A DNA stretch of 64,000 nucleotides from Podarcis erhardii (Eukaryota): the NCBI GenBank assembly GCA_964252035.1, contig OZ176209.1; one strand, written 5' to 3'. The notes beneath the pieces are model-generated. The model ran no database searches and had not been told where the DNA came from. It saw only the letters and a list, made by a program, of their open reading frames with translations. This document shows, in pieces, positions 11,601-63,724 of the stretch (positions within the stretch are counted from its first letter, which is position 1; every line of letters begins with the position of its first letter). Position numbers and translations under genes: made by a program.

Positions 11601-14600
11601 CTCCCTTCAAGTCAGGCCAGATTAGCCCAATGGTCAGGGATGATGGAAGTTGTAGTCCCACAACTTTTAATGGGCCACCAGTCCCACAGCCTTCTATATG
11701 CGATGCCACAACATGCTCTGGACTGAGTTTCCCTATTCAGGAAAACCGAAACAGCAATAATAAATTTACTATTCAATGCTTAAATTGTCTACAATTCCAT
11801 TTTGTTCCACATTCCCTCCCACTGCTAACGTTTGTTGTTCAATTTCTCCTTAACGTTTCAGCTGTCTTGTTTCATTCTTGGGAGGTATCTCTGCGTTCAT
11901 ATTTTATGTCAATATAATAGAGTGCAAATGGATCTCTTTGTCTGGAATAACCTGGAAGTAATCTAGGAATATGTCTTAAACTTCGGCTCATTAAGATAAA
12001 CACTAAATTTGCATTGAGCTCCAAATGACCAAAAACAACCCTGACTTGGCTTCTTTCCCAACACATGCTGGGCTCCTGTTGTGTGAGGAAATGAACATGA
12101 TGAAAGTGTTCTCTTACAGCTTTGGAAGGCCCAAGAGGTCAAGGAAGGATTAAGGTAGGACAGGAAAAACACCCTTTCTAAAGGCATGTACACAGGTGCT
12201 TATTCTGTGATCCCTGTAGCCCACTTTCTATGAGAAACATTGGTCTGTGTTATGACTACCTCTCTGTAGCTGATTCACAACCAGTGGCTATGGTTTTGAG
12301 GCCAGTGCTACTCAAAAGTGGTGGTCCATGAACCAGCGCTGGTTCACAAGCCATCTGCTGCCTGTCTGCATTGGACTCCACCCCAGGTTGAGTGGGATGC
12401 TTGAGGGACCAAATACAGTACCGGTCCTCAGCAAATTGGGGCAGGGTAAATTGCTGGTCCACTGCATTAAATAGTTTGAGAAGCCCAGACATAAGAACTT
12501 GGTTTTGATAGGAATATTCTGGAAGCGGAATTTGTGAGAGGACCTCAGCAGCTACGGGGGAGTTGTGGTTAAGGAGATGTTGGTAATGTACTTTCCAGCA
12601 CAGTGCAATAGCTTCTTTATCTTTTAGAACTGTGGTACCATCTGCTGAGCATAGGGGGCATATGCCATGATTTATTGGCCCATAGATGGTCTTTGTGGCT
12701 TTAAAGAAACTCTGTGCATCATGAGTGTCGAAGACAGGTGAACTAATATCAGTGTACTGGATGAAGCAAAGATCACCAGTGTTGAAGCAATGATTCTTCA
12801 ACATCAGCTTCGTTGGACTGGTCATCTTGTGTGGATGTCTGATTATCGTCTTCTGAACTTAAAAATGGAAAGTGTAATGCTGGTGGTCAACAAAAGAGGT
12901 TTAAAGACTCTCTCAAGGCAAATCTAAAAAAATGTAGTATAAACACCGAAAACTGGGAAACACTGGCCTGCTAGCGCTCCAACTGGAGAACAGCCTTGAC
13001 CAAAGGTGTCATGGACTTTGAAGATACTCAAACTCAAAACACAAGGGAGAAACTTGCTAAGAGGAAGGCACGCTTGGCAAATCCACATCGTGATCAGCTC
13101 CCGCCTTGGAACCAATGTCCCTACTGTGGAAGGACGTGTGGATCCAGAATTGGCCTCCACAGTCACTTATGGACTCACTGTTAAAACCATGTTTATGGAA
13201 GACAATCTCACTCGGCTACAAGTGATCACCAAAGAAAAGAAGATTCTGGGAGCAAAAGTGCTGGCCTTTTCCATGAATGCTTCCTGTGTTTTTAGTTTGG
13301 ATTTATAAGAGCCAAACTAGATGTGATGCAGCAGCTGCATGATTCATGGAGGATAAGTCTGTCAATGTCTGTTAGTGATGACAAGTGGGACTGGACCTGC
13401 AACATTAATGTTGCACTATAGACTGCTCCTGCTGTTTAGGGTTCAAGCCAATAAGTTATTCCATCTTCTAGGGGATGCCTTTATTTCCCGCAGCTGATGG
13501 CTTTCTGGTTCTCTCCCCTACAACAAGCATTCCATGCATACACGTGCTCTGTCCTCACTGGGTGGTCTCCGCAGTTTCTTCAGACCTCCTGACACCTCCC
13601 TCTCATCCGTGGAGGGTGCCATTTTGGCTACATAACGACCAGCACTCAGAGGATTGAGTTCAGTATTAGTGTACATAACAGCTATATGCAGCTTGCAGGA
13701 TTCAGAGACACCTCTGAAATTACCAGTTGCTGAGGAAAGACAGGAGCAGGCTATTGCCCTTAGCTTTGCAAGCCCAGTCTGTTTGCATCCCCCTTGTTGC
13801 TTTTAAGTCTTTTAAAAGAGTTGGGAGTTCTGATAATGTAGCTCCCACATAAGGATAAGTGTATCTGTCAGTTTTGGTTTCTCTCATTTTAAATTTTCCA
13901 GTCTTCAGTTCTCCATATTTCCACATCACTTTGCATTTTTGTTACAGTGTTTTGTTCAGCACTGTATTCATCCTAATATAGACATGGTTTTTATGCAGTT
14001 TTGCCTAATAACACACATTTTTGCAAAAGGTTTTCCCTTGATATAATGCTGCTATTTCATGAATATGCACAACTTACCCTAATATTTGCATTTTTGTACA
14101 CATAACTTGGCTGGTGAACTGCAAATAGAGGCTGAAGGCCCAGCAAGACGGGAATTTACCTTTGCCCTTAACACGGGGCCAAGCGCCGCTATTGGTCAGC
14201 TGGTCCCACGCCCAGGGTACACACACTAATTCCTGTCACCATTGGCCAATTGGGTGGCAGGAGGATGATCTGGCCTGCAATAAGCCGGTTCACAGAGGAG
14301 GTCTGGGGGCCGCCCACAAAACTGCCTGCCTGAGAAGGGGCGAATGGACTTCTCCCACATCCCATGCCACTTTTTTTTTTTTTTTTTAAATGCTCTAAGT
14401 GGCTGTCTTAGGCCAGAGACAGATATTAGTATTTTGGAGAGGTGCCATCATTGTCTGCGATGTGACTGCTGGCTTTTTCCATTCCACCAGAGCAGGAGCT
14501 TCATGCACTGAACAGATGCATAAACTTGTCAGTGCTACAGGAAACACAAAAGTTGATATTTTGTCCCCTTCAATGGCATGGATGGAATAATTTGGCACTG

Positions 14601-17442: not shown

Positions 17443-17476
<34 letters not shown>

Positions 17477-20400: not shown

Positions 20401-23400
20401 CAAAGAAAACGGGGGGGGGGATCTCTAGGGCTGAACCTCCGTATTATTTTTTATTTCTTCAACAAATGGAGGATATCCATGGATGACAGCAATTAACCCA
20501 TTTTTGCCTCAGTTTTTCTTTCTGGATTTTTCTCCTGCCCAGGGGAATCTCCTTGTTGCAATTCTGTTATATGCTCCTGGGCAACAAAGGTGGTTGTGAC
20601 TCCAAACACTATGATGAATCTTCCTTCATCAAGCAGGGCTGAAAATCCAGCTTTTATGTATACAAGCGCCCACCTCTACCATGGGACTCTCCCCACACTG
20701 CACCTCCTCCTCAGCCACCAAACCTCCTCTTCCCAGGCCATGACACAACCCTCAGTATGGTGCCCATAGATGCCTTTGGTGGCAGTCACTTTTTGTTTCT
20801 TAAAGGCAACATTGTGCCACCTTTATGCTTTTTATGGGCCTTAGTGAGTGATAGCTTTTTTCGATGCTCAGGTGCTTAGAGTTTGCTGAGGGGCAACAAC
20901 AAGCGGTAAACGGATCTGGTGCATCTGTTCAGAAGCAGCTGTTGTAGCCTCCTTGGCCCCGCAACTGCTCCCCCCTCCTCGCCTCTCCTTTTCCCCTCAG
21001 TCACCAAAGCTCGTTCCACTTTGCCTGGCTGAAAAGTTCCTTGCCCAACTGCCCTCTTTTAATCTCTTCAAGACAAGTTCCTCCATGTCAAATCCTGGTT
21101 CCAGCTGAGCTGCTGTGCCAGCCTTTTTGTGTGGAGGAGGTGTCTACAAAGGAGATTAAGGGGGTGCCTGCCTGGGGGGGGGGAGGTCAGCAAAATCCTT
21201 TGTAACCCCTTTAAACCCCTCCCAGGCCAGCCTAGAAGCTTTATTTTGACAGCATCAGTAGAGAGGTGCTATTCCTGGAGGATAAGGCAATCAATGGCTA
21301 CAAGCAATGATGGCTGTATTCTGCTTTCACGGCTGAAGGTACACTCCTCAAAATTATTCTTTGAATTTCAAAGGAGAGATGGTTACCCAGTCATTCTTTT
21401 CAGGTTTCAATATTTTTCCAAAAATTCTCTGAAAACCTGGCCGCTGTATTAAATTCCGACAGTTGAAAATTTTGCAATATTTGATAGTTCACGCAAAGGG
21501 ATATTGAGTATTTGGCAGTACTGAAAGCCAGTGTCGTGTAGTGGTTAAGAGCGGTAGTCTCGCAATCTGGTGAACCGGGTTCACTTCCCCGCTCCTCCAC
21601 ATGCAGCTGCTGGGTGACCTTGGGCCAGTCACACTTCTCTGAAGTCTCTCAGCCCCACTCACCTCACAGAGTGTTTGTTGTGGGGGCAGAAGGGAAAGGA
21701 GAATGTTAGCCACTTTGAGACTCCTGAAGGGGAGTGAAAGGCGGGATATCAAATCCAAACTCCTCCTCCTCCTCGTCTTCTTCTTCTTCTGATGGCAGAT
21801 GGTGTAACACAGTTGTTTTCAAGTCTGTTACCTTCAGTGAGCACAGCGGTGGAGGATTTTGTCACCCCCTCTGGGATGACACCTGGTGTGGACCGCCCCC
21901 ACCGCCCCCCTTCCTACGCCCCTGAGTGAGCACTTTCCAAGTCAACATGTGCCAAATGCATGTCTACTGCAACATTCCTGCACACCAAGGAGGATTTTAG
22001 GTTATGTTCCAGGCTGCGTGTTGCCTGCATTTGCATGTTGATATTTCAGCTTAATCGGCTGAGATGTGGATGGGCATCATGCACCCACATGCATCCCTTT
22101 GCTGTCACCATGATCTTTCCTTTGCACCAACCAGGTTGTTTCCTGTAACATGCAGATGGAGAAACTAGGGCAAATGGCTTCTAAGCAAAGCAGAATATGA
22201 AGCCATGCTTTAAAGTGGGCTTGCAGATATTGGTTTATTTGGCAGCCATTTGCTATAATTCTGGGTTCAAATGTGATGAAAAGCTGTAGTTAATTATGGC
22301 TTCCTGGCTTATATAATACCTTCCAACTTTTCCCGATGCAAAACCGGAACGCACGTCTTTGGGATATGCTTCCGGGTGAGTCACGTGAACTGCACCTTGC
22401 TCCTGCCCTGGAAAATGTGCTATTTTGGAAGGGGTGGGGTGAGATTGTGGTCCCAGGAAAAGTGCCATGCTTTTTCATGAAACCACTGTAAACACTTGGG
22501 AGTCACCACACAAACAGTTTTGTAATCAGAGCGAAAGTGGCTTTGTGGAAACCGCATCAAATCCCAGTATTTCAGAAGAAGCCAGAGGATTGAGAGTAAT
22601 TGTGGATAACATCATGTGTACATGGATTCGAAGGCTGGCGTGAAAATAGACTAAAGCCAGACGAAAGGGTAATGTGTGACAGAGGGACCTCACTTGACAC
22701 AACAGATCAGCTTCCCTTTTTCTTCCCTACTTAATTTTACTGTTAGGGAAGGGGGACAGAAAAGGACTTTCTTTTGGGGAGGTAAATTGCCTCTTGATAC
22801 TGTAGGCTGAGGTATTTTCTCTAGTGGAGTTATTGACAAACAAGTCCCATCCACTGTCTTTCAAGTGGCAAAGCTTCCTTGAGGTGATGCTCATTCCACT
22901 TTGCAATGTTTTTTCTGTTGCTTACAGGTATGGATGGATGCAGGTACTCAGATCTTCTTCTCTTATGCCATTTGTCTGGGATGCCTGACAGCTCTGGGCA
23001 GCTACAACAAGTATCATAACAACTGCTTCAGGTAACTGAATGTGAGTCCACCATGCAAAGTCCTGCCCTTTTCACTTGTTGTTGTTTTCTTTCTGAACCT
23101 TCAGTATACTTTCTGCAAAGCAGCAGAACTTTACTGGATTAAAATAATCCCTGCTCTGATCCTGTGTGTTGTGTTTCTCAAACTGCCTGTCTTTTCCAAA
23201 TGAGTTTTTAAATTTGTTCGTTTTCCAGAAACTAAAAGGTGAGTCATCTGTTACAAGAAACACAAGGCTTCTACCAAAAATGGATCTTCCATATCAAGTT
23301 GTCCCCTTCCAGCCCTCTGTAAAATGTAGCAAAATTTAACCCACTTTTTCACATTGGTTGGTTCCACAATACTAACATAATCTGGAATTGCCATCCTTCA

Positions 23401-26400
23401 CTCACTCACTCACTCACTCACTCACTCACTCACTTTTTACAGAAAATCCAGACAATGTCATTGCCAGCATTTAATTTCCCCCCTTCTCATCCTGTGTTTT
23501 CCCCCCAGACCTAATTTGTGACAAATCTTTAATTTACATTTTAAATGTAAAAGAAAATTGTCACTGGCAAAAAGTGAATTGAGGTTATTAGGAGTTACTG
23601 TGCCTTTAGTTACAAGCTTACTCCTTGCATCTTCTCCCTCCTCTGTTCCTTCCTATTTCTTGTGGCAGCAACTACACAGTTAAAACATCTAATAATAATT
23701 GTGAAGGAATAAATGAGACAGAAACTGCAAAGAGTAAGCTACTAATTAAAAGCACAGTAACCCTGAAAAACTTCAACACACTTTGCCAGCTATAGCTGTC
23801 TTTTAAATTTAAAATGTAAATTACTATTTTTTAAACTGTATTCCACTCATCCTGTTCCCTCCATGGTGTAGAGATGGGGCCTTAATTACAAAAAAAGAAA
23901 ACAAGAAAAAAAAAGATAGAAAACCAGTAAATAAATCTGCTTTCCCTTCCACCAGGTAGAACAGCAAATGAGAAACTAAGCTCCAATTAATAGGCTATTC
24001 ATCAGTAACTGATTGATTAATAATTCATGCAATTAATTTAGTGATTTCCCTAAGATGGACACATCTTCATTTGATTAATTCAGTCTTGTTGGCTATTGGT
24101 GGTGCTTATCATTTGATTGGCTGCCCGTCTTTATAAATGTTTCATTCTTACTAGATGTATGGTTTGTTTTGTTGCTCTGACATTCACCTGTTCTTCCTAG
24201 GGACTGCATTGCTCTGTGTTTTTTGAACAGTGGGACAAGTTTTGTGGCTGGTGTTGCAATCTTTTCCATCTTGGGCTTTATGGCACAGGAGCAGGGAGTG
24301 CCTATTTCTGAGGTAGCTGAGTCAGGTGAGTGGTTTATGCAGAAAAGTAGCATTATGATCATCAGCATCCTAGAATGCTGTATGTGACTGCACTTTTGGG
24401 GGGCGGGGGCAACGTGCCTTGATTCTATAAAGGGAGAGCCAAATTAGACTGGGAGGCCTTTTCTCTTCCCCCTTCCCCCTTCTCTTGTAGCAGTGCCCAC
24501 AGCCAGTGCGGTGTAGTGGTTAAGAGCGGTAGTCTCGTAATCTGGGGAACTGGGTTCACATCTCCACTCCTCCACATGCAGCTGCTGAGTGTCCTTGGGC
24601 TAGTCACACTTCTTTGAAGTCTCTCAGCCCCACTCGCCTCACAGAGTGTTTGTTGTGGGGGAGGAAGGGAAAGGAGAATGTTAGCCGCTTTGAGACTCCT
24701 TAAAGGGAGTGAAAGGCGGGATATCAAATCCAAACTCCTCCTCCTCCTCCTCCTCCTCCTCCTCCTCTTCTTCTTCTTCTTCTTCTTCTTCTTCTTCTTC
24801 TTCCTGCTGAAGATGGTACCCAACACTTTAGCAGCCTTGTTTCTTTATTAATACTGTGCATGGCAGTGCAACAAAGATCCGGGAAAGAGGCTGGACTGCC
24901 ATATAAATATAATTTGGCGAATGTGGCTTACATTTTGTCATTGTTCTCACTGCCTGTCGGGTGTTCATAACACCTCTTCGCAAAACTCTCTGATTCCAGC
25001 ACACCTCACTTAGCCCCTTTCTCTCGGCAGGGCCTGGCTTGGCGTTCATTGCATACCCGCGAGCTGTCGTCATGCTGCCTTTCTCACCATTATGGGCCTG
25101 CTTCTTCTTCATCATGGTGGTTCTGCTGGGACTGGACAGCCAGGTAATAATGCCTTGAGAGGGTAGGTTCAGCCAAGAACTTAACCTCTCGCCTGGGAGG
25201 CAGAAGACACCTTGCTTCTTTTGCTGTGGGTGATAAACCACAACTTCACACTGAGGAAAAGGGCCTCGGACAGACCTAACAGGGCATGAAATATATTTTT
25301 CCCTACCTGATTAGACTTATCTTGGTGTGCTTACCCAACTCATCATCTGCCGGGGAAGGTGCAGGAGGCTGGAATCTTGTTGTCTGAAGGAGAACTTGTA
25401 ATGTTACCTTCAATTAATTCATTGCTTGGGTGAGCAGCCAACGTTGAAGGTAAAAATGCTGTTCATGTTGGTTGGGCTCAGGACTGGAATCAAGCTTTGG
25501 GGACCCGGTCTGCTCACGTCTTAAGGTGTGGCAAGCATTAGAAGCCCTCAAATTCTTCTCCAGCTCAGAACTGCTAGGGCCGTGTTATGTTCAATACTTT
25601 GTGGAGAACTTGTTGAGTTGAATGATGAGGGAGGGTCTAAATTGGGTGATCTTCGGTGATAGGAAATTGTTGATGGGTGCCTAAATTATCTCCCTAGTTT
25701 GTCTGTGTGGAGAGCCTGGTGACAGCCCTAGTTGACATGTATCCTGGAATCTTCCGGAAAAAGAACCGCAGAGAAATGCTAATCCTTATTGTGTCCATCC
25801 TCTCATTCCTCGTGGGACTGGTCATGATCACAGAGGTATCGGAACTTACATTTCCTTTGCTAATATAACTTCTGCATAAAAAGGGAGGGAAAGAGGGTTT
25901 GCTGTTGTTGCAAATACAACATACTCTTTTTAACCCCATGGGTGCCAGTGGCACTAAAATGGACAAATTGCTCTACTTCCCCCTCAAGACACCCCTCTCG
26001 TAAGGAAATGAAAGTCACCTCAGAGGATCCTGTGGTCTCCCACTCCATACTGGGAGGAGTGCCCTGTTAAGGCAAGGAGCTGCCAGGGAGACTCAAACAG
26101 GATTTGAGCAGGGGTGGGAAACCTTTGACGCTTGAGATGTTGCTGGACTACGGTTCCCATCATCCTTCACCACTGGCAATGCTTGCTGAGGCTGAGAGGA
26201 GTTTAAGCATCTGGAGAGCCAAAGGTTCACCACCCCTGAATGAAGAGGCAACAAATTGGGGCTCTGCCTTTAACTGATCACCAGCACTTTATCAGTTGGT
26301 TTGAGTAATCAATCAACACTGCAGCCTGGGTTTTCATAGACAGCCAACTATCTAATCATGAAATGTAGCATAGGAGCCAATTCCTAGGGGCCAAAGGGTG

Positions 26401-29839: not shown

Positions 29840-32800
29840 GTAATAATGTCAAGAGCATGTTGCAGAATATACCTGCAATAATACTGAAGAGGCCTTAGAA
29901 AAACTCCTAGTGAATGAGGCACCTTGATGTCACTTCTCTGGCCTACCCTATATTGCCTTACTGGCCAGAGAAGTTGCCAATCATTGCTTTGATACCTTAA
30001 ACAGGTGCTGCTAGCCTTTCCTTCTCCCCACCATATGTTTCTAGAAGACTGCTTTCCCACTCCTCTTTTTGCTTTTCACAGGCGCTGACCGTTTCTATGA
30101 TAACATCGAAGACATGATTGGCTACCGGCCATGGGCTGTCATCAAATACTGTTGGCTATTCATCACTCCAGCTGTCTGCGTGGTGAGTTAGACATCCCAG
30201 TCATTTGATCAGGAGGCACAACAGGAAAGAGTGCACTTGGGCAAAGGGGCAGTGGGCAGTGATTTTCCAAAATTGGGGTACCGATAGTCTTTATTCTTGC
30301 TGTACTGTACTGCAGGTGGGATGCGGGTGGTGCTGTGGGTAAAACCACAGTGCCTAGGACTTGCCAATCATATGGTTGGCGGTTCGAATCCCCGCGGTGG
30401 GGTGAGCTCCTGTCTTTCGGTCCCAGCTCCTGCCCACCTAGCAGTTCGAAAGCACCCTTAAAGTGCAAGTAGATAAATAGGTACCGCTTTATAGCGGGAA
30501 GGTAAGCGGCGTTCCGTGTGCTGCGCTGGTGCAGGCCCGCCAGAGCAGCGATGTCACACTGGCCACGTGACCCAGAAGTGTCTGCGGACAGCGCCGGCTC
30601 CCGGCCTCTAGAGTGAGATGAGCGCACAACCCTAGAGTCTGACAAGACTGGCCCGTATGGGCAGGGGTACCTTTACCTTTACTGTACTGCAGTGTGTGGT
30701 TCCTCAAGGAACTGGGGGATAATGATAGGATTCTGCATAAGTGGAAACAGACAGAATCCAGAAGAAGTTCAGGATGCCTAAACCCAAAACTGGATGCAGG
30801 TTGGTTCATGTCCTGTAGTTCAACATCCTGACAGTTATGGGATTGGCCCTTTCCCACGTCTACTGTTACATGTTTGTGCTGGAGTTATAATACTTTAATT
30901 CTGATGGAGGTGGGTAATAAATGGGGCAGAAGTTGATAGACAGGTTCTGTTACCCAAAATGCAATGTGTGGTCAAATATTGCATTGTGGGTAATTGGCCA
31001 TGGCAGGTGACTGTAGCGGATCGGACTCAAAAGTGCTGCCACTCACCAGAAGAAAATGGGCCCTTCTGAGCTCCAGGGGCCTGACTACACCAACCCCTGA
31101 CAATGGGCCTGGGAAGATATTTGATTGTGGATCACCAAGGCCAGCCTATACTATTGGGCAGAGTTCCAGCTAATTTTTGGGTGCCAGGCAGCTAATTTTT
31201 GGGTGTCAAGAAACGGCAGCAAATGCTTCGTTATTTAATGGATGGTGATAATGATACATCTGCTGCTATGGGAGAGGTGTCTGTGAGATTATTATTTTTT
31301 GCCTCAGATGCCAAAATAGCTTGGCCAGCCATGAGTATTATGAGTGGGGAAGTGGGGAGTGGCATTTGCTGCTTTGCCTCAGGCAGCAAAACATATTGGG
31401 CTGTCCCTGCACATCTCACCTAGCTCGGCCCTGATGGTATCTATATGCTGTGGATAGCCAACAAGATATGGTTGGGCTCTGAGACTCTTCTTCCCCAGCC
31501 AGCTGTAGTTCAACAACATCTGGAAACTAACCACATTGCCTACCTCTCCTACTGTGTGTGTATGCATTGTGTGTGTGTGTGTTGGGTCATCAGGAGAAGT
31601 ACTTCCTTGGCCAGAACTCAGAAATCTTGGTCAGGGAGGTTCTCATTGTGTCAAGGCCATTTTGCTCTGGCCATAAAGTGAGCAACATGAATTAGGTATG
31701 GATGGTGTGCTTAACCCTTCCTCCTCTCCTCTCCCCAGGCTACATTTCTCTTTTCTCTCATTAAATACACCCCACTGACATACAACAAGAAATATGTGTA
31801 CCCATGGTGGGGAGACACGGTGGGCTGGCTGCTGGGACTCTCATCCATGATCTGCATCCCGCTCTGGATTGTCTATAAACTTTCCACCATCAAGGGCTCC
31901 CTGAGAGAGGTGAGGTTGTTGTTGTTGTGTTTAAGAATTGGACTTTGAGAGGCTGCTTGGGCGAGGGAGGCTTGCTGGTTACTCAGCCTATTGACGCGAT
32001 GCACTTTGGAGGCCGGCTTGTTGTGCTGCAAAAGTAATTAACGGGGACATTGCACTAATTTTTGCCAAGGATCATTCAGTTACTGGCAAGAGGAGTTCAC
32101 GGCTTTATCGAGCTCCGCTTGGCTCGAGGGCTAGGCAGATGAAAACTGCCTTCCTGTGAGCTTGTTATTGACTGCACAGCATTTTTAAAATGTCACCATT
32201 TGAGAGCTTCGCTTTGCAGTGCTCTCTGGCTCCCTTCCTTCCCCTCCTCCTCTGCTTATTGACTTCCAGAGAAAACACTTCATGTATTTCCTGTGTGATA
32301 TTTTAAATTTGTTTTCCACTATTCAGAGCTATTGAAGAAGTTGCAGTATCATGAATGCCGTGGGGGGGGGGATTGCCACCCCCCTCCCCCGTAGTTGGAG
32401 CTGTGCCTTCTTAAAGCCATTTCAAGTTTCTTTCTCTACCCCCCAAATAATTCATAGCAAGTTTCAAAAGCCTTATTCAGTATTAAATTACACAATACAA
32501 CAGTATTCTCAGCCCATGCTGCTTTGTTCTATTTCTTCTTTTCTACATGTTATGATTCTTAGTCATGGTGATTGATTGATTGATTAATTAATAAATGTTG
32601 ATTATATGTTGATATTTCTTGACTTTATTTCAGTACCATTCCTAATAATTTGGAATGGTGTTCTCAGTTATGGGACCTGATATAGACAAACTAACAGCGT
32701 ATGTGCAGGAAAGGAGATCGGGCCAAAAATCCAAAGGGTTCCTCCCCACTGTTTGGCATGACTTTATCACCTATGCAACACTGAATGAGCATGGGCACAG

Positions 32801-34439: not shown

Positions 34440-35037
34440 GGAATGTGGGTGGTGCTGTGGGTTAAACCACAGAGCCTAGGACTTGCTTCATAAATATGGT
34501 AGTATTAGCAATTGTAGCAATTATTAGCCAGCAACGCAAAACATTTCGTAGAAATAGACTGCAGCTGGCATCATTTAGGGCCCTGCCCTCCTAGGCCAAG
34601 TGGAAATGAATGAGACAGAATATGGGGGACCAACCCTTTCAAGACTCAAGGGTTTGCATTTTAGTACCAACCTATATAACTCATGGGACGCGGGTGGCGC
34701 TGTGGATTAAACCACAGAGCCTGGGACTTGCCGATCAGAAGGTTGGCGGTTCAAATCCCCGCGACGGGGTGAGCTCCCATTGCTCGGTCCCTGCTCCTGC
34801 CAACCTAGCAGTTCGAAAGCACGTCAAAGTGCAAGTAGATAAATAGGGACCGCTCCGCCGGGAAGGTAAACGGCGTTTCCATGCGCTGCTCTGGTTCACC
34901 AGAAGCAGCTTAGTCATGCTGGCCACATGACCCGGAAGCTGTACGCCGGCTCCCTCAGCCAGTAAAGCGAGATGAGCGCCGCAACCCCAGAGTCAGCCAC
35001 GACTGGACCTAATGTTCAGGGGTCCCTTTACCTTTAC
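34440..35037 (+). mobile_element. chimeric Sauria SINE: short head + about 200 bp foreign DNA + full SINE (34685-35037)
   Basis: 15-bp direct repeat TTTATATCTATTGTA at 34425-34439 and 35038-35052 brackets the whole unit. Confidence 0.75.
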
Positions 35038-36239
35038 TTTATATCTATTGTAAACGTGGAGAACCAAACATGAGACTGGAAAAAATAGAAGGCGAAATCA
35101 ACATATACGCCCATCCCTAATCGCAATGAGCACAAGCAAGGGCATGGAACATCTTCTTTGTTAATGGCAGTGAGGGTGTCTTCCTACATGCAGGATTCCT
35201 TTTTGAGCTGTTGCTGTGCCTTCTGAGCAGAATAGTGGCTGTCTAGTGGCCCATGGAAGGGGAAAGATTAATTATATAGCAATGCTGTTCAAATATTCAA
35301 AGCAAATGTTTTTGCTGAAAATGATGGCCAGCTTTTTTTTTTTAAACAGAAATCTTGCAAGTATTTGTTGCCACAATTTTTTGTGTGTGAAAGAAATCAT
35401 TTTTCTTTTGTAGTCCAGGCATGAAGACATTTGTTATTCAGCAGTTCATTATTCACTGACTTCATTATTTGTCCATTATTCAGTATAGGTTGGCAAGCTG
35501 CAGACTGATGAAACTGCATCACATGATGAAGAAGGAGGTGCTGAGGTGCTGTAGTGTGGAATACTAACAATTATTTGGGCAGCAGTCCAGCATATTGATG
35601 GAACATTGTAAAAAGTCCTAGATTCTTTGAGGGAGATGGATTGAGGATTAAATCTGTAGATTAAAATTTAAACCTCCTATACACATGTGTGGGAGAAATG
35701 GAAAAGTAAGCAGGCTGCGAAGCCTCTGTAGCTGAGCAAAAACACTTATATGTTTTACAGTTTGCTGAAGTTTAAGAATTACGAAGTTATACTGTTTTAC
35801 CCCCTTTTATTTGTGATCTGCTGACCTTCCTCTCTTCACCCCCGTTGCAGAGAATGAACCAGACATTTTCAGTAAGATAAGCAAAAGGTTTTACTTACAT
35901 TTCAATGAAGGCAGCAAATGCATCAAAGTAGTGTGCAGAAAAATACTTCTAAGTTACCATAATATAAAAGTTGGTAGTCTCAAAATAGTGTGTGTGTGTG
36001 CGTGCGCATGCGTGCATACTTGAAGCCCCAGACACATGTCTGCCTCAGACACATGTCAGAGGCAGAAGGAAGTGTAAGGGATTATCACATTTGTTACAGA
36101 ATTGCGCTGAGAAGGCAAAGGAAGTGGCCTCACACAGAGGGTCCTAGCAAAACATGCACTTGTGATTTGGCTACAAACCCCACAGATTCCATGTATGATT
36201 TCATACATTTTATCTCACTGGTTTTCCAGCTCTAGCAAA

Positions 36240-46682: not shown

Positions 46683-47390
46683 CTCATTTCTTCTCTGATG
46701 TATCATATGAAAATACAGCTGAGGGAAGAGTGGAATATAAGATATCATAGTCTAGATCAGGAATGTATAGTAGTCAAAGGAGAAATTGTATTTGTTAGGT
46801 AAACTAATTGAAAACAAGTCGGACCCAGAGCCTGTTTGCCATGTTGTTCTCAGCATCCTGGCCACTGGGAATAAAGGCTGTGGCATTCAACATTCAGCTG
46901 CTGTGTTCCCTCACCCCACTTTTCTGGTCATGCAAACTGACTCAGTCTCCTCCTTATTTATGTCTTTTAATAACATCTATGGGCATTTCAAGGCAGTGGT
47001 TCAGGGAAGGTGCTCTAATGTTAGAAGGGTCAAGTGGGTGCAACCGGGCGTGGTTCGAAATGTACAATAGCAAATAATGTGGATATTGTATGAAGGGTTT
47101 ATCAATTCGGAAAGGTGTGGGAGGGCCCTTATTGCCAGATGTTTTAAAAAGAGCATAGCTTCTGTTTGCTTAACTTAACTGTGCGATTCTGGAATGTTGC
47201 TGATTAGCAATATGCACTGGGAACTAGAGAGTAATCGCTTTTTAAAGAACCTGGCCCTGATTTGGATGTGGTATAGTGGCTAGGAACAGGGAAAATCTGG
47301 GTTCAGTTCTCTGATCAACCATCAATTCTCTGGGTTACCTTAGGCAACCCATGACTCCTGGCCAAGATACTGTAACAGGATTGTTTTGGA

Positions 47391-47580
47391 CAGTGGCGTA
47401 GCGTGGGGGGTGCAGGGGGGGCGGCCGCACCGGGCGCAACATCTGGGGGTTAGGGTTAGGGGGCGCAAATCCACGGGTTAGGGGGCGCAAATCCACGGGT
47501 TAGGGGGCGCAAATCCACGGGTTAGGGGGCGCAAATTACTTGCCTTGCCCCGGGTGCTGACAACCCACGCTACGCCACTG
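47391..47580. mobile_element. 190-bp non-autonomous hAT element with internal 22-bp GGGTTAGGGGGCGCAAATCCAC tandem array
   Basis: Perfect TIR CAGTGGCGTAGCGTGGG / CCCACGCTACGCCACTG, perfect 8-bp TSD GTTTTGGA. Confidence 0.9.
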
Positions 47581-48303
47581 GTTTTGGAGGATGAACCCAT
47601 GAATAATGCCCCGATTTCCTTGGAGGAAGCAAGGCATACAATTAAGAAACTTGCAGCACAGAGGTCCACTACAATTGTCTGTCCCCTTGCCAGCCCTTAC
47701 ATTAAATGCTAGTTTTATGGCCCTGGCTGCATGCCCTAGTCTCTGCAGCCAGTTCTGCAACATTAGTTTCCCAGCTTTTAGCAATCTTTATTCTGGCTGC
47801 ATAAAGCCAATTAGATATTTATGTGACATTCCTTCATTCTCCCCTTCCCATACATTTAGCAAGCTCTTGCTTTGTAAATTTCATTCCTTGAAAATTAACT
47901 CCCAGTGCTTATATACCTCCTCGCAATGCCAGCACATGTGAGGATACAAGCCTCTTTGATTGCATCCCCTACCGCTGAATCCATTTACGAATTTTCATAA
48001 ATAAGTATCCTGTATGAAGTTTCCCAAATTGTTGCCAGGATGGACTTGATGGGCTTTTCCCTCCGCAATCTAACCAAAGCTAATAACTTTTAAATCTTGT
48101 TTATTCAACAAACAAACAAACAAACATTTATTTTATTTATTTCCCAACTCAACTTAGGTGGAGGCGTGATTTGCTTGTCAGCCTCTGCCTCTCAGTTTAA
48201 GCTGCCTTCCGGGGTTGTTGTGAGGGTAAAACACGGCCATCCTGAGCATTTTTGAGGCAGGAGAGTGGAAAATAGAAATGAAATGGATAAATCCAATGCT
48301 ATA

Positions 48304-49222: not shown

Positions 49223-49227
<5 letters not shown>

Positions 49228-49271
<44 letters not shown>
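49228..49271. repeat. (GA)n microsatellite
   Basis: Directly visible. Confidence 0.95.
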
Positions 49272-49274
<3 letters not shown>

Positions 49275-57599: not shown

Positions 57600-57807
57600 A
57601 TGGAAAGCAAAGGACCTTGGGATGGGGAATCCAGTGGGATTATGGTTGTGCCAGCGGTAGAAGAAAAGTCAGAAGAGAGGAAGGATGAGCTTGAGGACAG
57701 AGGACAGTGGACCAACAAAGTGGAGTTTCTACTGTCTGTGGCTGGAGAGATCATTGGTCTGGGCAATGTATGGAGATTCCCTTATCTCTGCTACAAGAAC
57801 GGAGGTG
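57600..57807 (+). CDS. SLC6A12: SLC6A12-like coding exon 1 (MESKGPWDG...[37 protein letters not shown]; TM1)
   Basis: Acceptor cttcag ends at 57595, Kozak gccATGG at 57600, donor gtaagt; SLC6 signature [13 protein letters not shown]. Confidence 0.92.
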
Positions 57808-60800
57808 GTAAGTGCACAGCATCCATAATTTTTCTAGTGCCCTTTATTTCATTGTAGCCATTGGTCATCAGGAAACAATAAAAAAATAATCGTAGCAGCA
57901 CATTTTAAGCTTGCAATACAGCAAGCCATATGCAATATGCAGACTAAACATAAAACTCACTATAAAATTTATGACGTGCAATGAAGAAACTAATTAAAAA
58001 TATATCAGATTAAAAAAAAATCATTAGATAAGATGGTCCCCTTAGCAGCTGCTAATCATATTTTGTGCAGCAGATTTATTGCAAAGAGGACTATTTTATG
58101 AGCTAGATATTTGTCACAAAGTAGATAACAGATTTCCACAGCCTTGCACAAGATAGGTTTTTTTTGAAACTGTGCAATCATTTTTTTGTGTCAAAGAACT
58201 GTGAGCTCGGTTCACCCCCTCCCCAGTGGTGGCACCAGAATTTTTTTGGGGGGAGGAGGACACACATAAGGGGCATAGTATATCTCTAGGTGGATGAGCT
58301 GTTTCCCACATGATCACTTCCGGATTTGTGGTGTTCGGGAGCCAAAACGCTTGAGAACTGAAAAAATTAGTAGCATATGTTATTGACAGGAGTCCAGCAA
58401 AGGGGAGGGGCCAGTGGGAGAGGTAAGCACCTTGTTTGGGTGGGTGCTTGCCTCCCTTGCCCCCTGTTGAGAGAGGGGGAAAGTAGCTGGGGGTGTTTTA
58501 GAACAGAGAAGAGGTAGTCAGCATAAGGATTCCACTTCTTCACTGCTTCTCTGCTCTCGTTTGTCACTGCCCTCCATTTTGTAAAAACAAAAAATAGTGA
58601 TGGAACTCTAGTGCAGTCATACCTTGGAAGTTGAACAGAATCCATTCCAGAAGTCCTTTTGACTTCCAAAATATTCAGAAACCAAAGAGCGGCTTCTGAT
58701 TGGCTGCAGGAAGCCCTGTCGGATTCCCAAAAATGTTCACAAACTGGAACACTCACTTCCGGATTTGTGGTGTTCGGGAGCCAAAACGTTTGAGAACTAA
58801 GCTGTTCGAAAACCAAGGTACGACTCTAAATGTGCATTTGTGGAGGCAGCTATTTTGCAAGATCATTAATCCAGCCCTGTGAAAATATCACTTTCCCCTC
58901 TTTTTAACAAAGGTGTTAATAATGAATTTGCTTCAGCTTCTCTCTCTGCTCTCTTTCCCCACAGGTGCCTTCTTCATCCCATACCTCATATTCCTCTTTG
59001 CTTGTGGGATCCCAGTATTCTTGCTGGAGACAGCCCTTGGGCAGTATACCAGTCAGGGTGGGATCACTGCCTGGAGACGGATCTGCCCTATCTTTGAAGG
59101 CAAGTTGGTAATACAAGGGAAGTCCTGGTAGCTTTCCGCCAAACACGCACTGTACTTTTTGATCTAATTCCCTCTGAGCTCCCCTGCTACAGGGCATGGC
59201 TCAGAGCCAGCTGCCGTTGTACCTGTTCAGAACTGCAGTCTAAGTCAAAAGCGCGAGTCATTCTGAAGTGTAGATATTGGAGGCAGAGCTGGTTCTCAGT
59301 ACAGAGTCAAAAGGTGGTGGCAAAGAAGCAGCCAAAAGCAAAACAAGTTTAAAACTGCAGAGCCCCTGCCAAGGCAGGTGTGAAAGGGCAGATATTCAGA
59401 GGAGGAAGAAGCGGTGGCGACAACAAGGAACCACAAGTCCGCAAGTCTTTCTGTGTTTAAGATAAAAACGTGAGCTCCCTGTCTGCAGCAGCAGTGAGGA
59501 GTTGAAGAGTGAGGTGATTTCCTGCAAGGCATTGTTTATGCTAGGAGTGGTAGGTTACGCTGCAGAGGTACTAACTGATCATGTACAACAGGGATGGGGA
59601 ACCTCATGCAAAGGGCCAAATGTGGCCCTCCAGGTCTCTCTGCCTGGCCCTAGGAACTCTCCACAGGCCACACTCCTCATGGCCATTGCTTCACCCCCAA
59701 GTGGTTTTGCCTGCCTGGAATGTGTCCTTGAATTCTGGTAATGTTTATTGCTTGCCTGGATGGAGGATAGAGGTGTGTGTGTGAGAGAGAGAGAGAGAAA
59801 GAGAGAGAACTGTCTCTGAAAATTTACACATCACTTGGGAAGACAGGCGAACTAATACTGGCGTACTGGAAGAAGCAACAATCACCAGTGTTGAAGCAAT
59901 GGTTCTTCAACATCAACTTCGTTGGACTGGTCATGTTGTGCGGTTGCCTGATTATCGTCTTCTAAAGCAACTACTCTATTCCAGACTTAAAAATGGAAAG
60001 CGTAATGCTGGTGGTCAACAAAAGAGGTTTAAAGACTGTCTCAAGGCAGTTTTTAAAAATGTAGTATAAACACCAACAATTGGGAAACACTGGCCTGCGA
60101 GCGCTCCAATTGGAGAACAGCCTTTACCAAAGGTGTAATGGGCTTTGAAGACACTCAAACTCAGGACGCAAGGGAGAAACGTGCTAAGAGGAAGGCACAC
60201 TTGGCAAATCCACATCGTGATCAACTCCCGCCTGGGAACTAATGTCCCCACTGTGGAAGGATGTGTGGATCCAGAATTGGCCTCCACAGTCACTTACGGA
60301 CTCAATGTCAAAACCATGTTTATGGAAATACAATCTTACTTGGCTACGAGCAGGGGCGTAGCGTGGGGGGTGCAGGGGGGGCCGGCCACACCAGGCACAA
60401 CATCTGGGGGGGGCGTGCTCACCGCCTCCGGAGTCGCTGAAGAGCCTCGGGCGCAGGCTGTAGCAGAGCCCCATGTCTCGCGGAACCGACGAGCTGTGCG
60501 CGCGTCTGGGCTGAAGGCGTCCAGCAGGCAGCGGCTCTCAGCACTCACCGCGGTCCCTGCGTGTCAGGGCCGCAGAAGGCGCGCCAGGCAGCCCCTCCTC
60601 ACAGCCCCGCTGCTGCTGCTGCTGCTGCAGCTGCTGGGCCATGTTGCATTTTCCTCGCCTCTCTGCCCTCCTCCTCCGGGCAAGCGGCGTCGTTTGGGCG
60701 GCAGCGCCAGCGGCAACTCGCCTCAGATCACCTGACACGGACCCGCCGCCGCCGCCGTGGCTACCTTACCGTAAATACCCCAGCCCAGGCAGCAGCAAGA

Positions 60801-61445
60801 AGGAGCTGGCAGCGGTGGCAGGTTAGGGGTTAGGGGGCGCAAATTACTTGCCTTGCCCTGGGTTAGGGGGCGCAAATTACTTGCCTTGCCCCGGGTGCTG
60901 ACAACCCACGCTACGCCGCTGGCTACGAGTGATCGCCAAAGAGGAAGACTCTACAAATATGAAATTTGCATCCATTGCCCTGTCCACTGTGAAGCAATGG
61001 TTCTGCCCTCCACAGGCATGTGGATCTCACCTGCCTTCAGACCAGAGTTGGGGAACTAGTGACCTTCTGGACATTGCTGGACTCCAGTTCCCATCAGCCC
61101 CTGTGAGCACGGCCTGGGATGATGGCAGTCACATCTGGAGACCCACAGCTTCCCCACCTCTGCTTCTGGCCAGTCTCTGAACTATGTTTGGTCCTATCAG
61201 TAACTGAAAACCTATGTCTTTTTCAATCACAGCTTGACAGGAAATTGTGGCCCTTTTTGTCTGTTTTTAACCATCACCTTTATCTCTCTCTCTCTGCCAC
61301 TCAGGAATTGGCTATGCTTCCCAAGTCATCGAATCGTTCCTGAATGTCTACTACATCATCATATTGGCTTGGGCCCTGTTCTACCTATTTAACTCCTTCA
61401 CTGCTGTTCTACCCTGGGCCAGCTGCAGTAATACCTGGAACACAG
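57600..61445 (+). CDS. SLC6A12: SLC6A12 / BGT1-like betaine-GABA transporter, spliced CDS, 3'-partial (coding exons 1-3)
   Basis: Exons of 208, 135 and 141 coding nt in frame. TM3 reads [22 protein letters not shown], closest to BGT1 ([16 protein letters not shown] as recalled). It sits downstream of SLC6A13 in the same orientation, as in the mammalian SLC6A13-SLC6A12 pair. A lineage-specific paralog cannot be excluded. Confidence 0.8.
58614..58826. mobile_element. Tigger/pogo-like MITE, second subfamily, diverged
   Basis: Ends cagtcataccttgg / ccaaggtacgactc; interior homologous to 28592. Confidence 0.65.
58965..59099 (+). CDS. SLC6A12: SLC6A12-like coding exon 2 ([45 protein letters not shown]), GC donor
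   Basis: ccacag acceptor; 135 nt like the paralogous exon 2552-2686; donor AAG|GCAAGT. Confidence 0.92.
60351..60921. mobile_element. Pack-TIR-like non-autonomous hAT element with about 410 bp of captured CpG-rich cargo
   Basis: TIR CAGGGGCGTAGCGTGGG / CCCACGCTACGCCGCTG, perfect TSD GCTACGAG (60343-60350, 60922-60929); both ends match the cargo-less element at 47391. Confidence 0.9.
60418..60474 (-). pseudogene. GNAL: captured fragment resembling the start of the GNAL long (XL G-alpha-olf) first exon: [19 protein letters not shown]
   Basis: ATG in gagacATGG context; the peptide matches my recollection of the human XL-Golf N-terminus [16 protein letters not shown] (first 9 residues identical); recalled, not database-checked. 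Confidence 0.7.
61305..61445 (+). CDS. SLC6A12: SLC6A12-like coding exon 3 ([47 protein letters not shown])
   Basis: actcag acceptor, gtatga donor, 141 nt. Confidence 0.93.
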
Positions 61446-62720
61446 GTATGACTCTGGCAAGCTGCCACCTCCTGCCTGGCTTTCTGAAGAAATGGAACTG
61501 TAGTTCTTCTTACTTTGCTATATAAGTTCAGGCGCAAGATACGTTGGCAGACGAAATTAAAAATGGAAATCCTTTTTCTCACCCCCTTGCTGGTGAAAAT
61601 ATAATAAGTAATTGGCAATTTAAAGTAGCAAAAAATATTGGCATTTGAATATTGTCACTTCTGATGTGACATTTGTGTCCATTTATTCTTTTGCGTAGAC
61701 TGACTGCTTAGTCCTATGTAGGACATTATTGGCAGATGATAACATAAACTGGGTTGTATCCAATGCTACTCAGAATAGACTTATGGAAATTAATGTACAT
61801 GGCTAACTTAGGCCCATTAATTTCAATGGGTCTGTTCTGAGTTAGGACCTAGATGGGCAGGTGAATGAACCCCAGATGTTGTGGTTGATACTACTGGAAG
61901 AATTCAAAGGCTATCCCAAATCTGTTGGCTGAGGTTTCTCCATCATTCTCTGCCTAAGGTTAGGGATGGCTCTGGACCAAGGCAACCTAGCGCTTGTGAT
62001 ACGTCTTTGTCTTGTCTTTCAGAAGATTTGATATGGTCTATTTTCTCTCTGAGCCCAATCACGATGATAGAGATGTGGGGTGTACCTTTATTTTATTTAT
62101 TTTATTTTAAAAAGACCTCATGATGTCTTGGAATGAAAAACCCTTGTGTGAGGGTTGTGGCTGTTTTAATCTCATGAGTGCAACTCCCAGAGAGTGGTAT
62201 TTGTTTTTGTTTTGCTTTTGGGGGCATAGGGGAAAAAAGAGAGAGGAAATACTCACTGCACATTCTTCTCTTTGCTTTCCTCCTTAGATATGTTGTAGTC
62301 AATTCTGTTCTGAGTAAAAAAAAAAGTCTAGTTCTTTTCCCTTAAAGCCTTTGTGTGTGTGCCTGGCTGGTTCCTGGCTTTGTGGACAGCCTTTCTGTGA
62401 GCTGAACATGACCTTCTGAACTCATGACTGAAAGGATAAGAATGTTGTACCACTGACCTCCTCACATGGCAATAAACACTGCAACCCCCCCCCCCGCCTG
62501 CCTCTCTCTTTCAAGTCGCTGAAGAGACCAGAGTCTCATGCAGTGGGGCTGTGAACTCCACCTTTGTACACTCAGCCTTTGCTTTATTTCATTTTATTCA
62601 GAATCCACAGGGCCCTGGAGAAGCAAGGCAGAGGTTCCACCTGGCCTCTGAATGCCTCTTGCCTTCTGTTACAGTCTTTTGCCTCTTTCTCTGCAGGCTG
62701 GAACAAGTGTATCCACATTA

Positions 62721-63068
62721 AAGGTACCCCTGCCCGTACGGGCCAGTCGTGTCCGACTCTAGGGTTGTGCGCCCATCTCACTTAAGAGGCCGGGGGCCAG
62801 CGCTGTCCGGAGACACTTCCGGGTCACGTGGCCAGCATGACGAAGATGCTCTGGTGAGCCAGCACCAGCGCAGCACACAGAAACGCCGTTTACCTTCCCG
62901 CTTTAAAGCGGTACCTATTTATCTACTTGCACTTAGGGGTGCTTTCGAACTGCTAGGTGGGCAGGAGCTGGGACCGAAAGACGGGAGCTCACCCCGCCGT
63001 GGGGATTCGAACCACCGACCATGCAATCGGCAAGTCCTAGGTAAAACCACAGTGCCACCCGCGTCCCC
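62721..63068 (-). mobile_element. Sauria SINE (same subfamily as 30316)
   Basis: TSD GTATCCACATTA / GTATCCATATTA. Confidence 0.87.
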
Positions 63069-63724
63069 GTATCCATATTACAAACCACCATTTTCCTTTT
63101 ACTCATACCAGGCATTTAATCTTTAATGACATCTTTATTTATTTATTTTTTTTAAATAATTTTTATTAAGGTTTTCCAAATTAAAACAAATTAAATCCAA
63201 TTTATAAACTTTTTCCAATAACTAGGACTTCCCCTCCCCACCCCCTCATGTATTCCAAATCTTCCAAATAAACAATTAGGTTCAACAAATTCTTATCCCC
63301 AAATTTAATGACATCTTTAGGCTCTGATCCCTGTTCCCAGTCTGGAGGTGGCCTTCCCTTCACAATTTCCAAGTAAGGGCACCCATGCCACAAGTTAACA
63401 GTATATCTAGCGCACATCTGAATAGCATGACACCCCCCAAATAATAACAGGAACTGTGGTTTGTTAATGGTGCTGGGGAATGGCATCTCTGTGAAGGGGA
63501 AACCATAGTTCCCAGAATTCTTTGAGGGAGGGTAGTCATGTGCTTTAAACTTGATTTAAATGTGTGGTCTGGATCTGCCCATAGTTTGCTAATTTTAGAC
63601 TCTTTATGGTCCTCCCGGGGGGTGGGGAGCAGGTGACGATTATCTCTTTATAAATGGCCATGGGTAAAACGTCACTTACTCTAGAATGGAGTAAGCCAGC
63701 CCTGCTGCATTTGGGGTCCTTCAT

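What the first reader, a model, noticed from the sequence alone, without database searches (positions are those of the whole stretch)
60343..60929. Pack-TIR-like hAT transposon carrying a fragment of the GNAL XL first exon into an SLC6A12 intron
Seen: a 571-bp element with 17-bp TIRs and a perfect 8-bp TSD (GCTACGAG) splits the tail of an RTE LINE. Its first 60 bp or so and last 100 bp or so match the cargo-less 190-bp element at 47391-47580. It also has about 410 bp (60411-60820) of CpG-dense sequence that the sibling lacks. On the minus strand, 60474-60418 reads [19 protein letters not shown] from a good Kozak ATG, preceded by a GC-rich leader. Knowledge (recalled): the XL isoform of G-alpha-olf (GNAL) begins [16 protein letters not shown]; 8-bp TSDs mark hAT transposition; capture of GC-rich gene 5' ends is known for plant Pack-MULEs and is rare in vertebrate TIR elements. 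Inference: a lizard hAT family captured the CpG-island 5' end of GNAL and transposed with it. Intact CpGs suggest the insertion is recent.
Basis: partly seen in the sequence, partly recalled or inferred. Interest (0 to 1): 0.9.

Follow-up and report, generated by a model that had tools for sequence, protein, structure and literature searches.

The report
Cargo-carrying hAT mini-transposon in lizard intron
A small cut-and-paste (hAT-type) transposon carrying about 410 bp of CpG-island-like DNA that starts a G-protein-like reading frame sits in an intron of a betaine/GABA transporter gene. It is a real example of transposon gene-fragment capture, a process already described in animals, but the claimed GNAL source could not be checked here.

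Summary
At 60351-60921 there is a 571-bp element with 17-bp terminal inverted repeats (16/17 matching) and a perfect 8-bp target-site duplication, GCTACGAG. A second copy of the LINE it interrupts (12730-13240) has one GCTACAAG and continues colinearly, so it serves as a paralogous empty site. The 190-bp element at 47391-47580 has the same ends and its own 8-bp duplication, but lacks about 409 bp. That extra DNA sits at one point, inside a G-run next to TTAGGG repeats. It is 69% GC with CpG o/e 0.80, against 0.29 for the window. Its minus strand reads [20 protein letters not shown] from a GACATGG start. The host intron belongs to an SLC6 gene whose exons match the betaine transporter (SLC6A12) best. 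The cargo is antisense to that gene.

The GNAL-XL origin could not be tested, because no tool reaches lizard DNA or full-length GNAL. It rests on recalled identity of 9-11 residues. Unchecked first-reader notes list at least 7 more copies with GNAL-like cargo elsewhere in this genome, and further hAT elements with other CpG-rich cargo. This suggests an amplified Pack-hAT subfamily rather than a single event. Pack-TIRs in animals, mostly hAT, are already published (PMC8277862). I rate this a new member of a known kind, of moderate interest.

The parts
60343..60350 (.). Left copy of the 8-bp target-site duplication GCTACGAG
   Evidence: a single homologous GCTACAAG in the paralogous LINE copy
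60351..60367 (+). 5' terminal inverted repeat CAGGGGCGTAGCGTGGG
60351..60413 (+). 5' backbone shared with the empty sibling, ending in a G-run (8 G here, 5 G in the sibling)
   Evidence: (91.7% to 47391-47449)
60414..60820 (-). Cargo: about 409 bp of CpG-island-like sequence absent from the sibling. Boundaries are ambiguous by 3 G on the left and 2 G on the right. The sense strand is taken as minus.
   Evidence: No other copy in the window. No Pfam or Rfam match.
60415..60474 (-). Start codon in a GACATGG context plus 20 cargo-encoded codons, [20 protein letters not shown]. The frame then runs on into the hAT end and the LINE (96-aa ORF, 60184-60474).
   Evidence: Resemblance to the GNAL XL N-terminus is recalled only.
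60821..60921 (+). 3' backbone: TTAGGG-like repeats and two 33-bp subterminal repeats (60827-60896), then the 3' TIR (60905-60921)
60922..60929 (.). Right copy of the TSD GCTACGAG. The LINE ORF's stop codon TGA follows at 60930-60932.
47383..47588 (+). Empty sibling: a 190-bp MITE (47391-47580) with perfect 17-bp TIRs, four 22-bp subterminal repeats and the TSD GTTTTGGA on both sides
59839..60342 (+). 3' part of the interrupted LINE. About 23 more bp of it follow the element at 60930-60952.
12730..13240 (+). Paralogous LINE copy that acts as an empty site (single GCTACAAG at 13215-13222)
58964..59101 (+). Upstream host exon (SNF profile positions 37-82)
61295..61450 (+). Downstream host exon (SNF profile positions 79-130). 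The best PDB match is the betaine transporter, residues 115-164.

Best explanation
This is a non-autonomous hAT-superfamily element built on a MITE backbone of about 160-190 bp. A fragment of about 409 bp from a host CpG-island promoter and first exon has been spliced into the backbone at one point, inside a G-run next to TTAGGG repeats. The fragment is most likely the 5' end of the extra-long (XL) first exon of GNAL, caught with 20 codons of coding sequence. Acquisition most plausibly happened once, by template switching or aberrant gap repair at the G-rich tract (inferred). The loaded element then kept moving by cut-and-paste, using a hAT transposase supplied in trans (inferred; no transposase is in the window). 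One such transposition put this copy into the last codons of a LINE ORF inside the intron between the TM2 and TM3 exons of an SLC6A12-like gene, duplicating GCTACGAG (shown). The cargo lies antisense to the host gene. It no longer encodes anything meaningful: the frame runs into the TIR and the LINE. It does bring a CpG-island-like, possibly promoter-active, block into the intron (inferred, untested).
For: Transposition is shown by the TIRs plus a perfect 8-bp TSD and by the colinear paralogous empty site. Family membership and cargo status are shown by the empty sibling, which has the same ends and its own 8-bp TSD. The extra DNA is a clean single-point insertion in the backbone with 2-3 nt of G microhomology at each side. 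The cargo looks host-like rather than transposase-like. It meets CpG-island criteria. It has no Pfam hit in any ORF on either strand, including hAT transposase domains, and no Rfam family. It has an ATG in a good Kozak context followed by MGLCYSLRP..., which from recalled knowledge equals the first 9 residues of human GNAL isoform 1 (XL), with LF also conserved at positions 11-12. Context comes from SNF exons on the + strand on both sides, which match the betaine transporter best. The upstream tandem gene matches GAT3 better, as expected for an SLC6A13-SLC6A12 pair. Precedent: Pack-TIRs, mostly hAT, occur in animals, including a multicopy frog hAT that carries a 5' UTR (PMC8277862). Lizard hAT families are known to incorporate extraneous DNA (PMC3014272). 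Unchecked scan notes report at least 7 further elements with GNAL-like cargo of 191-608 letters in other introns of this genome. One is described as ending after a poly-C tract, which would be the same junction.
Against: The parental locus was never seen. No search could reach this genome, other squamates or a full-length GNAL XL protein, so both host origin and GNAL identity are unverified. Only 20 codons are involved, and the 346 bp upstream of the ATG have no identifiable origin. With only two copies in hand, the direction (insertion into a backbone vs deletion from a longer element) cannot be polarised. The multicopy claim comes from unchecked AI notes. No autonomous partner and no expression or methylation data are available.
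Confidence: 0.6

Rival explanations
1. The cargo is host-derived CpG-island DNA but not GNAL, or not only GNAL. It could be the 5' end of another gene, or a mosaic of several first-exon/intron-1 junctions stitched together by serial template switches, as another first reader proposed for 60543-60820.
For: On the sense (minus) strand there are three donor-like sites at 7/9 or better to the consensus (60769 ACG|GTAAGG, 60731, 60548 GCG|GTGAGT), against one on the other strand. A second ATG in good context (60641-60639, aacATGG) opens [31 protein letters not shown] and ends at the 60548 GTGAGT. Pack-MULEs and Pack-TIRs are often chimeric (PMC8277862).
Against: Three against one donor-like sites in 426 bp of 69%-GC DNA is weak evidence. 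No piece could be matched to any gene. The MGLCYSLRP match to GNAL XL, if the recall is right, is too specific to be chance for that piece.
Confidence: 0.2
2. The 409 bp is the family's own internal sequence, a remnant of a longer or autonomous hAT. The 190-bp 'sibling' would then be a deletion derivative produced by abortive gap repair. Nothing was captured, and the N-terminal resemblance is irrelevant or misremembered.
For: Non-autonomous hAT families commonly arise by internal deletion (PMC3014272). The deletion would be bounded by G microhomology. Multicopy status also fits an ordinary family consensus.
Against: No ORF in the cargo shows any transposase or other Pfam signal. Unchecked scan notes describe the same short backbone loaded with different CpG-rich inserts, which would make the backbone ancestral. 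A 9-residue N-terminal identity with a conserved vertebrate protein would then go unexplained.
Confidence: 0.15
3. Chance or assembly artefact: the TIR/TSD pattern is coincidental, or the GC-rich block is a misassembly.
For: None found.
Against: The 25-nt terminal motif is found twice where none is expected. Both copies have perfect 8-bp TSDs. The paralogous empty site is colinear across the junction. The window contains no N.
Confidence: 0.02

Closest known systems
Pack-TIRs of animals, especially the multicopy Pack-hAT-N8_XT of Xenopus tropicalis (Tan et al. 2021, PMC8277862)
   Same: A non-autonomous hAT with TIRs and 8-bp TSDs carries a few hundred bp of a host gene's 5' end (291 bp of the CAPSL 5' UTR in the frog). 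Copies have distinct TSDs, which shows transposition after capture.
   Different: That survey found 0 Pack-TIRs in the lizard anoCar2 and only 4 multicopy families among 370. If the scan notes hold, at least 7 copies in about 44 Mb scanned points to a far higher copy number. The parent locus here is not yet shown.
Pack-MULEs of rice and other plants
   Same: Capture of GC-rich 5' ends of genes between TIRs, followed by amplification. Coding frames are truncated.
   Different: A different superfamily (Mutator, 9-10 bp TSD, long TIRs) in plants. Here the element is hAT-type with 17-bp TIRs in a vertebrate.
Anolis hobo/hAT non-autonomous families that incorporate extraneous DNA (Novick et al. 2010, PMC3014272)
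   Same: Lizard hAT elements whose central region is foreign 'filler' DNA and which still amplify.
   Different: The filler reported there is mostly other transposon fragments in 1.3-3.4 kb elements with TAGGCTTG... TIRs. The TIR CAGNGGCGTAGCGTGGG is not in their tables, and gene 5' ends were not reported.
Maize Ds1-type and MITE derivatives of hAT elements
   Same: Very short elements that share only the TIRs and subterminal repeats and are mobilised in trans.
   Different: They carry no cargo. The 190-bp sibling is of this kind, but the loaded copy is not.

Membership tests
hAT superfamily (non-autonomous member) | 8-bp target-site duplication | tested here: met
   GCTACGAG on both sides and GTTTTGGA on both sides at the sibling. 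The empty-site paralogue has one copy.
hAT superfamily (non-autonomous member) | Short TIRs (about 10-25 bp) that start YARNG | tested here: met
   17-bp TIRs starting CAGGG / CAGCG / CAGTG. The YARNG rule is from established knowledge, and the Anolis hAT TIR tables agree.
hAT superfamily (non-autonomous member) | Target preference nTnnnnAn | tested here: inconclusive
   GCTACGAG fits at position 7 only and GTTTTGGA at position 2 only. Two sites are too few.
hAT superfamily (non-autonomous member) | A matching autonomous element with a hAT transposase (BED finger, DDE, hATC dimerisation domain) | not testable with these tools
   None among the window ORFs scanned.
Pack-TIR (transduplicating TIR element, in the sense of PMC8277862) | Internal segment flanked by the family's TIRs and a TSD, and absent from ordinary family members | tested here: met
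Pack-TIR (transduplicating TIR element, in the sense of PMC8277862) | The internal segment matches a non-TE parental locus elsewhere in the same genome | not testable with these tools
   No parental copy in the 64-kb window. No access to the genome. Metagenome DNA scans were blank.
Pack-TIR (transduplicating TIR element, in the sense of PMC8277862) | For a multicopy family: several copies with the same chimeric junctions but different TSDs | not tested
   Only unchecked scan notes. Their sequences could not be retrieved.
GNAL XL (extra-long G-alpha-olf) exon 1 fragment | N-terminal peptide identical or near-identical to the species' own GNAL XL, and DNA identity to that exon and its upstream region | not testable with these tools
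   phmmer against 1.8 billion representatives gave only a spurious repeat-protein hit. A 12-residue match cannot reach significance there. The word search is limited to proteins of 53-168 aa. PDB and full-text searches were blank. The resemblance (MGLCYSLRP + LF) is recalled.
CpG island (Gardiner-Garden and Frommer criteria) | At least 200 bp, GC at least 50%, CpG o/e at least 0.6 | tested here: met
   410 bp, GC 0.69, o/e 0.80. It is one of 10 such blocks in the window.

The most novel reading that the evidence does not exclude
This G-rich, TTAGGG-bearing hAT MITE backbone may act as a recurrent trap for CpG islands in a lizard genome. The same backbone of about 165-190 bp would have been loaded, at the same G-run junction, with the 5' ends of different genes (GNAL XL, CENPW and others). 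Loaded versions would then have amplified to tens or hundreds of copies. That would make it a vertebrate counterpart of Pack-MULEs, scattering promoter-like CpG islands (often antisense) through introns.
Probability: 0.35. Interest if true: 0.75.

Novelty: new member of a known kind. Interest (0 to 1): 0.5.

Why it matters
Gene-fragment capture by DNA transposons is a major source of new exons, promoters and regulatory RNAs in plants. In animals it is thought to be mostly single-copy and independent of transposition. The 100-genome survey found only four multicopy families and none in the lizard. A lizard hAT family that picked up a gene's CpG-island 5' end and then spread it would add a clear vertebrate case of capture followed by amplification. 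It would also offer a natural experiment on how a genome treats dozens of dispersed copies of one promoter (methylation, antisense transcription, small RNAs against the parent gene). For this locus alone, the practical consequence is a CpG-island-like block antisense in an SLC6A12-like intron, which genome annotators could mistake for a promoter or an orphan exon.

Tried and rejected
- **Antisense ORF search.** I searched the 196-aa + strand ORF over the cargo (residues 90-196) against the 5.8-billion-protein set. There were 673 word candidates and none was significant.
- **phmmer on the sense peptide.** The 47-aa peptide against 1.84 billion representatives gave one hit at E about 1e-3. It is a 1167-aa repeat protein with LRPRLASFIGGGDHSP three times, which is coincidental.
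- **Word search on the 96-aa ORF.** Residues 1-40 returned no candidate. The tool only sees proteins of 53-168 aa, so a GNAL of about 450 aa is out of reach.
- **PDB phmmer on the peptide.** Only noise.
- **ESM Atlas feature search.** On residues 1-21 all scores were 0.44 or lower, which is meaningless.
- **Full-text searches.[14 protein letters not shown], XLGolf and the TIR sequence returned nothing relevant.
- **Metagenome DNA scans.** A wobble-degenerate MGLCYSLRP coding pattern and the hAT end motif both gave 0 hits.
- **Scan notes by sequence.** Blank.
- **Rfam.** Two sub-threshold chance hits.
- **Pfam.** Nothing on any cargo ORF, and nothing on ten long window ORFs scanned for a transposase.
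- **G-quadruplex idea.** The strict motif (four G3+ runs, loops 1-7) is absent from both copies. I only say the junction is G-rich and telomere-repeat-like.
- **Not attempted.** I considered padding the peptide or building an artificial alignment to get round the protein search's length window. I did not do it, because it would have needed typed filler or a meaningless profile.
Full report
**1. What is in the sequence**

- GCTACGAG occurs at 60343-60350 and again at 60922-60929.
- Between these lies a 571-bp element. It begins CAGGGGCGTAGCGTGGG, and its end is the reverse complement of CAGCGGCGTAGCGTGGG. This gives a 17-bp TIR with one mismatch at position 4.
- The element at 47391-47580 has perfect TIRs (CAGTGGCGTAGCGTGGG) and its own 8-bp duplication, GTTTTGGA.
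- A 25-nt motif from the 5' end occurs exactly at these two places in the window, where shuffles expect none. A looser TIR search finds only the four expected ends plus one 3-mismatch hit.
- The two elements share the first 60 bp at 91.7% and the last 63 bp at 98.4%.
- Both carry the subterminal repeat GGGTTAGGGGGCGCAAAT. The sibling has four copies at 22-bp spacing. The loaded copy has two copies at 33-bp spacing.

**2. Proof that it inserted**

The left flank, 59839-60347, is 87% identical to 12730-13219.
- That second copy of the repeat reads ...actcGGCTACAAGtgatcaccaaagaaaagaag.... It has a single copy of the target octamer, followed by the same sequence that follows the second TSD at 60930.
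- I joined the left flank, one TSD copy and the right flank, and aligned the result to the paralogue. The alignment is colinear across the junction until both LINE copies end, about 23 bp later.
- This is a paralogous empty site, so the 8-bp duplication was created by the insertion.
- The interrupted repeat is the 3' end of a LINE. Its ORF (...[15 protein letters not shown]...LLGYE) stops at the TGA directly after the TSD, which leaves a 3' UTR of about 20 bp. A very short 3' UTR fits the RTE clade from general knowledge, but I did not test the clade.

**3. The cargo**

Compared with the sibling, the extra DNA is one uninterrupted block.
- The sibling reads CTGGGGG|TTAGGGTTAGGGGGCGC.
- The loaded copy reads CTGGGGGGGG-cargo-GGTTAGGGGTTAGGGGGCGC.
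- The block therefore sits inside a G-run next to telomere-like TTAGGG repeats. Its boundaries are ambiguous by 3 G on the left and 2 G on the right, running from about 60411/60414 to 60820, or about 409 bp.
- It has GC 0.69 and 39 CpG, o/e 0.80. The whole window has o/e 0.29, and the LINE flanks have 0.50 and 0.12. It is one of ten CpG-island-like blocks in the window.
- Nothing else in the window resembles it apart from a CTG repeat.
- On the minus strand an ATG at 60474, in the context GACATGG, opens [20 protein letters not shown]. After 20 codons the frame leaves the cargo and runs through the hAT end and into the LINE, giving a 96-aa ORF.
- No ORF on either strand of the cargo matches any Pfam family, including hAT transposase domains. 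No Rfam family reaches threshold.

**4. Host context**

- Pfam finds SNF-family exons on the + strand at 57.7 kb (profile 1-43), 58964-59101 (profile 37-82) and 61295-61450 (profile 79-130). The element lies in the intron between the last two.
- Against solved structures, the N-terminal exon (57600-57809) and the exon downstream of the element (61295-61450) score best with the betaine transporter BGT1/SLC6A12: 86.2 and 73.2 bits, against 79.5 and 71.0 for GAT3.
- The equivalent exon of the upstream tandem gene scores best with GAT3, at 68.3 bits against 60.5 for BGT1.
- No GAT2 structure is in the PDB list. Still, an SLC6A13-like gene followed by an SLC6A12-like gene matches the known vertebrate arrangement (my knowledge). 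'SLC6A12 intron' is therefore reasonable.
- The cargo's sense strand is antisense to the host gene.

**5. Is the cargo from GNAL?**

I could not test this.
- The tools hold no vertebrate genomic DNA.
- The word-indexed protein search only sees proteins of 0.55-1.75 times the query length, so a GNAL XL of about 450 aa is invisible to a 96-aa query (no candidate).
- The exhaustive phmmer search cannot make a match of about 12 residues significant among 1.8 billion proteins. Its only hit was a repeat protein with a coincidental LRPRL..GGG.H.P motif.
- The antisense ORF, the PDB, the ESM Atlas, full-text searches and two metagenome DNA scans were all blank.
- What remains is recalled knowledge. 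Human GNAL isoform 1 (XL) begins [14 protein letters not shown], which would be 9/9 identical plus LF. If the recall is right, chance is excluded for that piece.
- The 346 bp upstream of the ATG has no identifiable origin.
There are three donor-like sites on the sense strand against one on the other strand. A second ATG-initiated frame ([17 protein letters not shown]...) ends at GCG|GTGAGT.

**6. Age**

The TSD is perfect and the TIR has one mismatch. In the 60-bp 5' backbone, however, the loaded copy has CpA at three sites where the sibling has CpG, plus a 1-bp indel. Some methylation-type decay has therefore happened in its lineage, either in the master copy or after insertion. 'Intact CpGs, hence recent' is only partly right. 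The high CpG content could equally reflect a germline-unmethylated state.

**7. Other copies**

- Scan notes from other windows of the same genome list seven more elements described as hAT plus a GNAL-XL-like start. They are 191-608 letters long and lie in introns of STX18, DST, CDKAL1, FLVCR2 and others.
- One note describes an orphan N-terminus 'that ends after a poly-C tract', which is what the G8 junction looks like on the sense strand.
- Seventeen notes describe hAT elements with other CpG-rich cargo, including a CENPW 5' end and 'one ~165-bp backbone, empty or loaded with different CpG-rich inserts'.
- These are unchecked AI notes and I could not retrieve their sequences.
- If they hold, the loaded element is a multicopy subfamily: seven copies in about 44 Mb scanned. 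The backbone may also be loaded recurrently.

**8. Mechanism**

- Shown: cut-and-paste-type insertion with an 8-bp staggered target, and a single-point chimeric junction in the backbone.
- Inferred: the cargo was acquired once by template switching or aberrant gap repair at the G-rich/TTAGGG tract. This corresponds to the gap-filling and FoSTeST models of PMC8277862.
- Inferred: the chimera was then mobilised in trans by a hAT transposase that recognises the TIR and the GGGTTAGGGGGCGCAAAT subterminal repeats.
- A strict G-quadruplex motif is not present, so I do not claim one.
- Any promoter or antisense activity of the cargo is untested.

**9. Comparison with what is known**

- Tan et al. 2021 (PMC8277862) found 370 Pack-TIRs in 100 animal genomes. 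Of these, 208 were hAT and only four were multicopy (three in frog, one in alligator). One was a frog hAT carrying 291 bp of a 5' UTR. The lizard anoCar2 scored 0, with few TIR elements analysed.
- Novick et al. 2010 (PMC3014272) showed that Anolis hAT/hobo non-autonomous families incorporate extraneous DNA, mostly other transposons. Their TIR tables do not contain this TIR.
- The present element is thus a new member of a known kind.
- What would raise its interest is confirmation of high copy number and of recurrent loading with gene 5' ends.

**10. Verdict**

The Pack-hAT reading is well supported structurally. The GNAL origin is plausible but untested, and novelty is moderate. I give 0.6 to the main explanation, 0.2 to host cargo from another source or a mosaic, 0.15 to family-internal sequence and 0.02 to artefact. 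Interest is 0.5.

Noticed in passing
window 5233-25155 (+) and 57600-61450 (+): Two SLC6 (SNF-family) transporter genes lie in tandem on the + strand. Exons of the first are at about 5.4, 8.5, 19.7, 22.9 and 25.0 kb and match GAT3 best. The second starts at about 57.6 kb ([10 protein letters not shown]...) and matches the betaine transporter best. This is consistent with an SLC6A13-SLC6A12 pair.
   Followed up: partly
window 16585-17249: A CpG-dense block of about 660 bp (GC 0.64, CpG o/e 0.83) is bounded by 31-nt inverted repeats (87% complementary). It is filled with nested palindromes of 31-51 nt (arms at 16680-16741, 16830-16880/17011-17061 and 16896-16941/17074-17119). No clear TSD is visible at the ends I read. 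It may be a different cargo-type or foldback element.
   Followed up: partly
window 47448-47536 and 60821-60896: The hAT backbone contains telomere-like TTAGGG units and a subterminal repeat, GGGTTAGGGGGCGCAAAT. The repeat's copy number and period differ between the two copies: four copies at 22 bp against two copies at 33 bp. These may be transposase-binding repeats.
   Followed up: partly
window 60145-60350 and 60930-60932; paralogue 12996-13222: The interrupted LINE's ORF ends in a Cys/His motif ([18 protein letters not shown](R/W)TH). Its stop codon lies directly after the hAT target site, which leaves a 3' UTR of only about 20 bp.
   Followed up: no
window 49227-49272: A dinucleotide microsatellite, seen as staggered self-hits in the BLAST of the flank.
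   Followed up: no
window 62661-63080, 30321-30700, 34621-35040: Further CpG-island-like blocks (o/e 0.69-0.79) show no TIRs detectable by the inverted-repeat scan. Their nature is unknown.
   Followed up: partly
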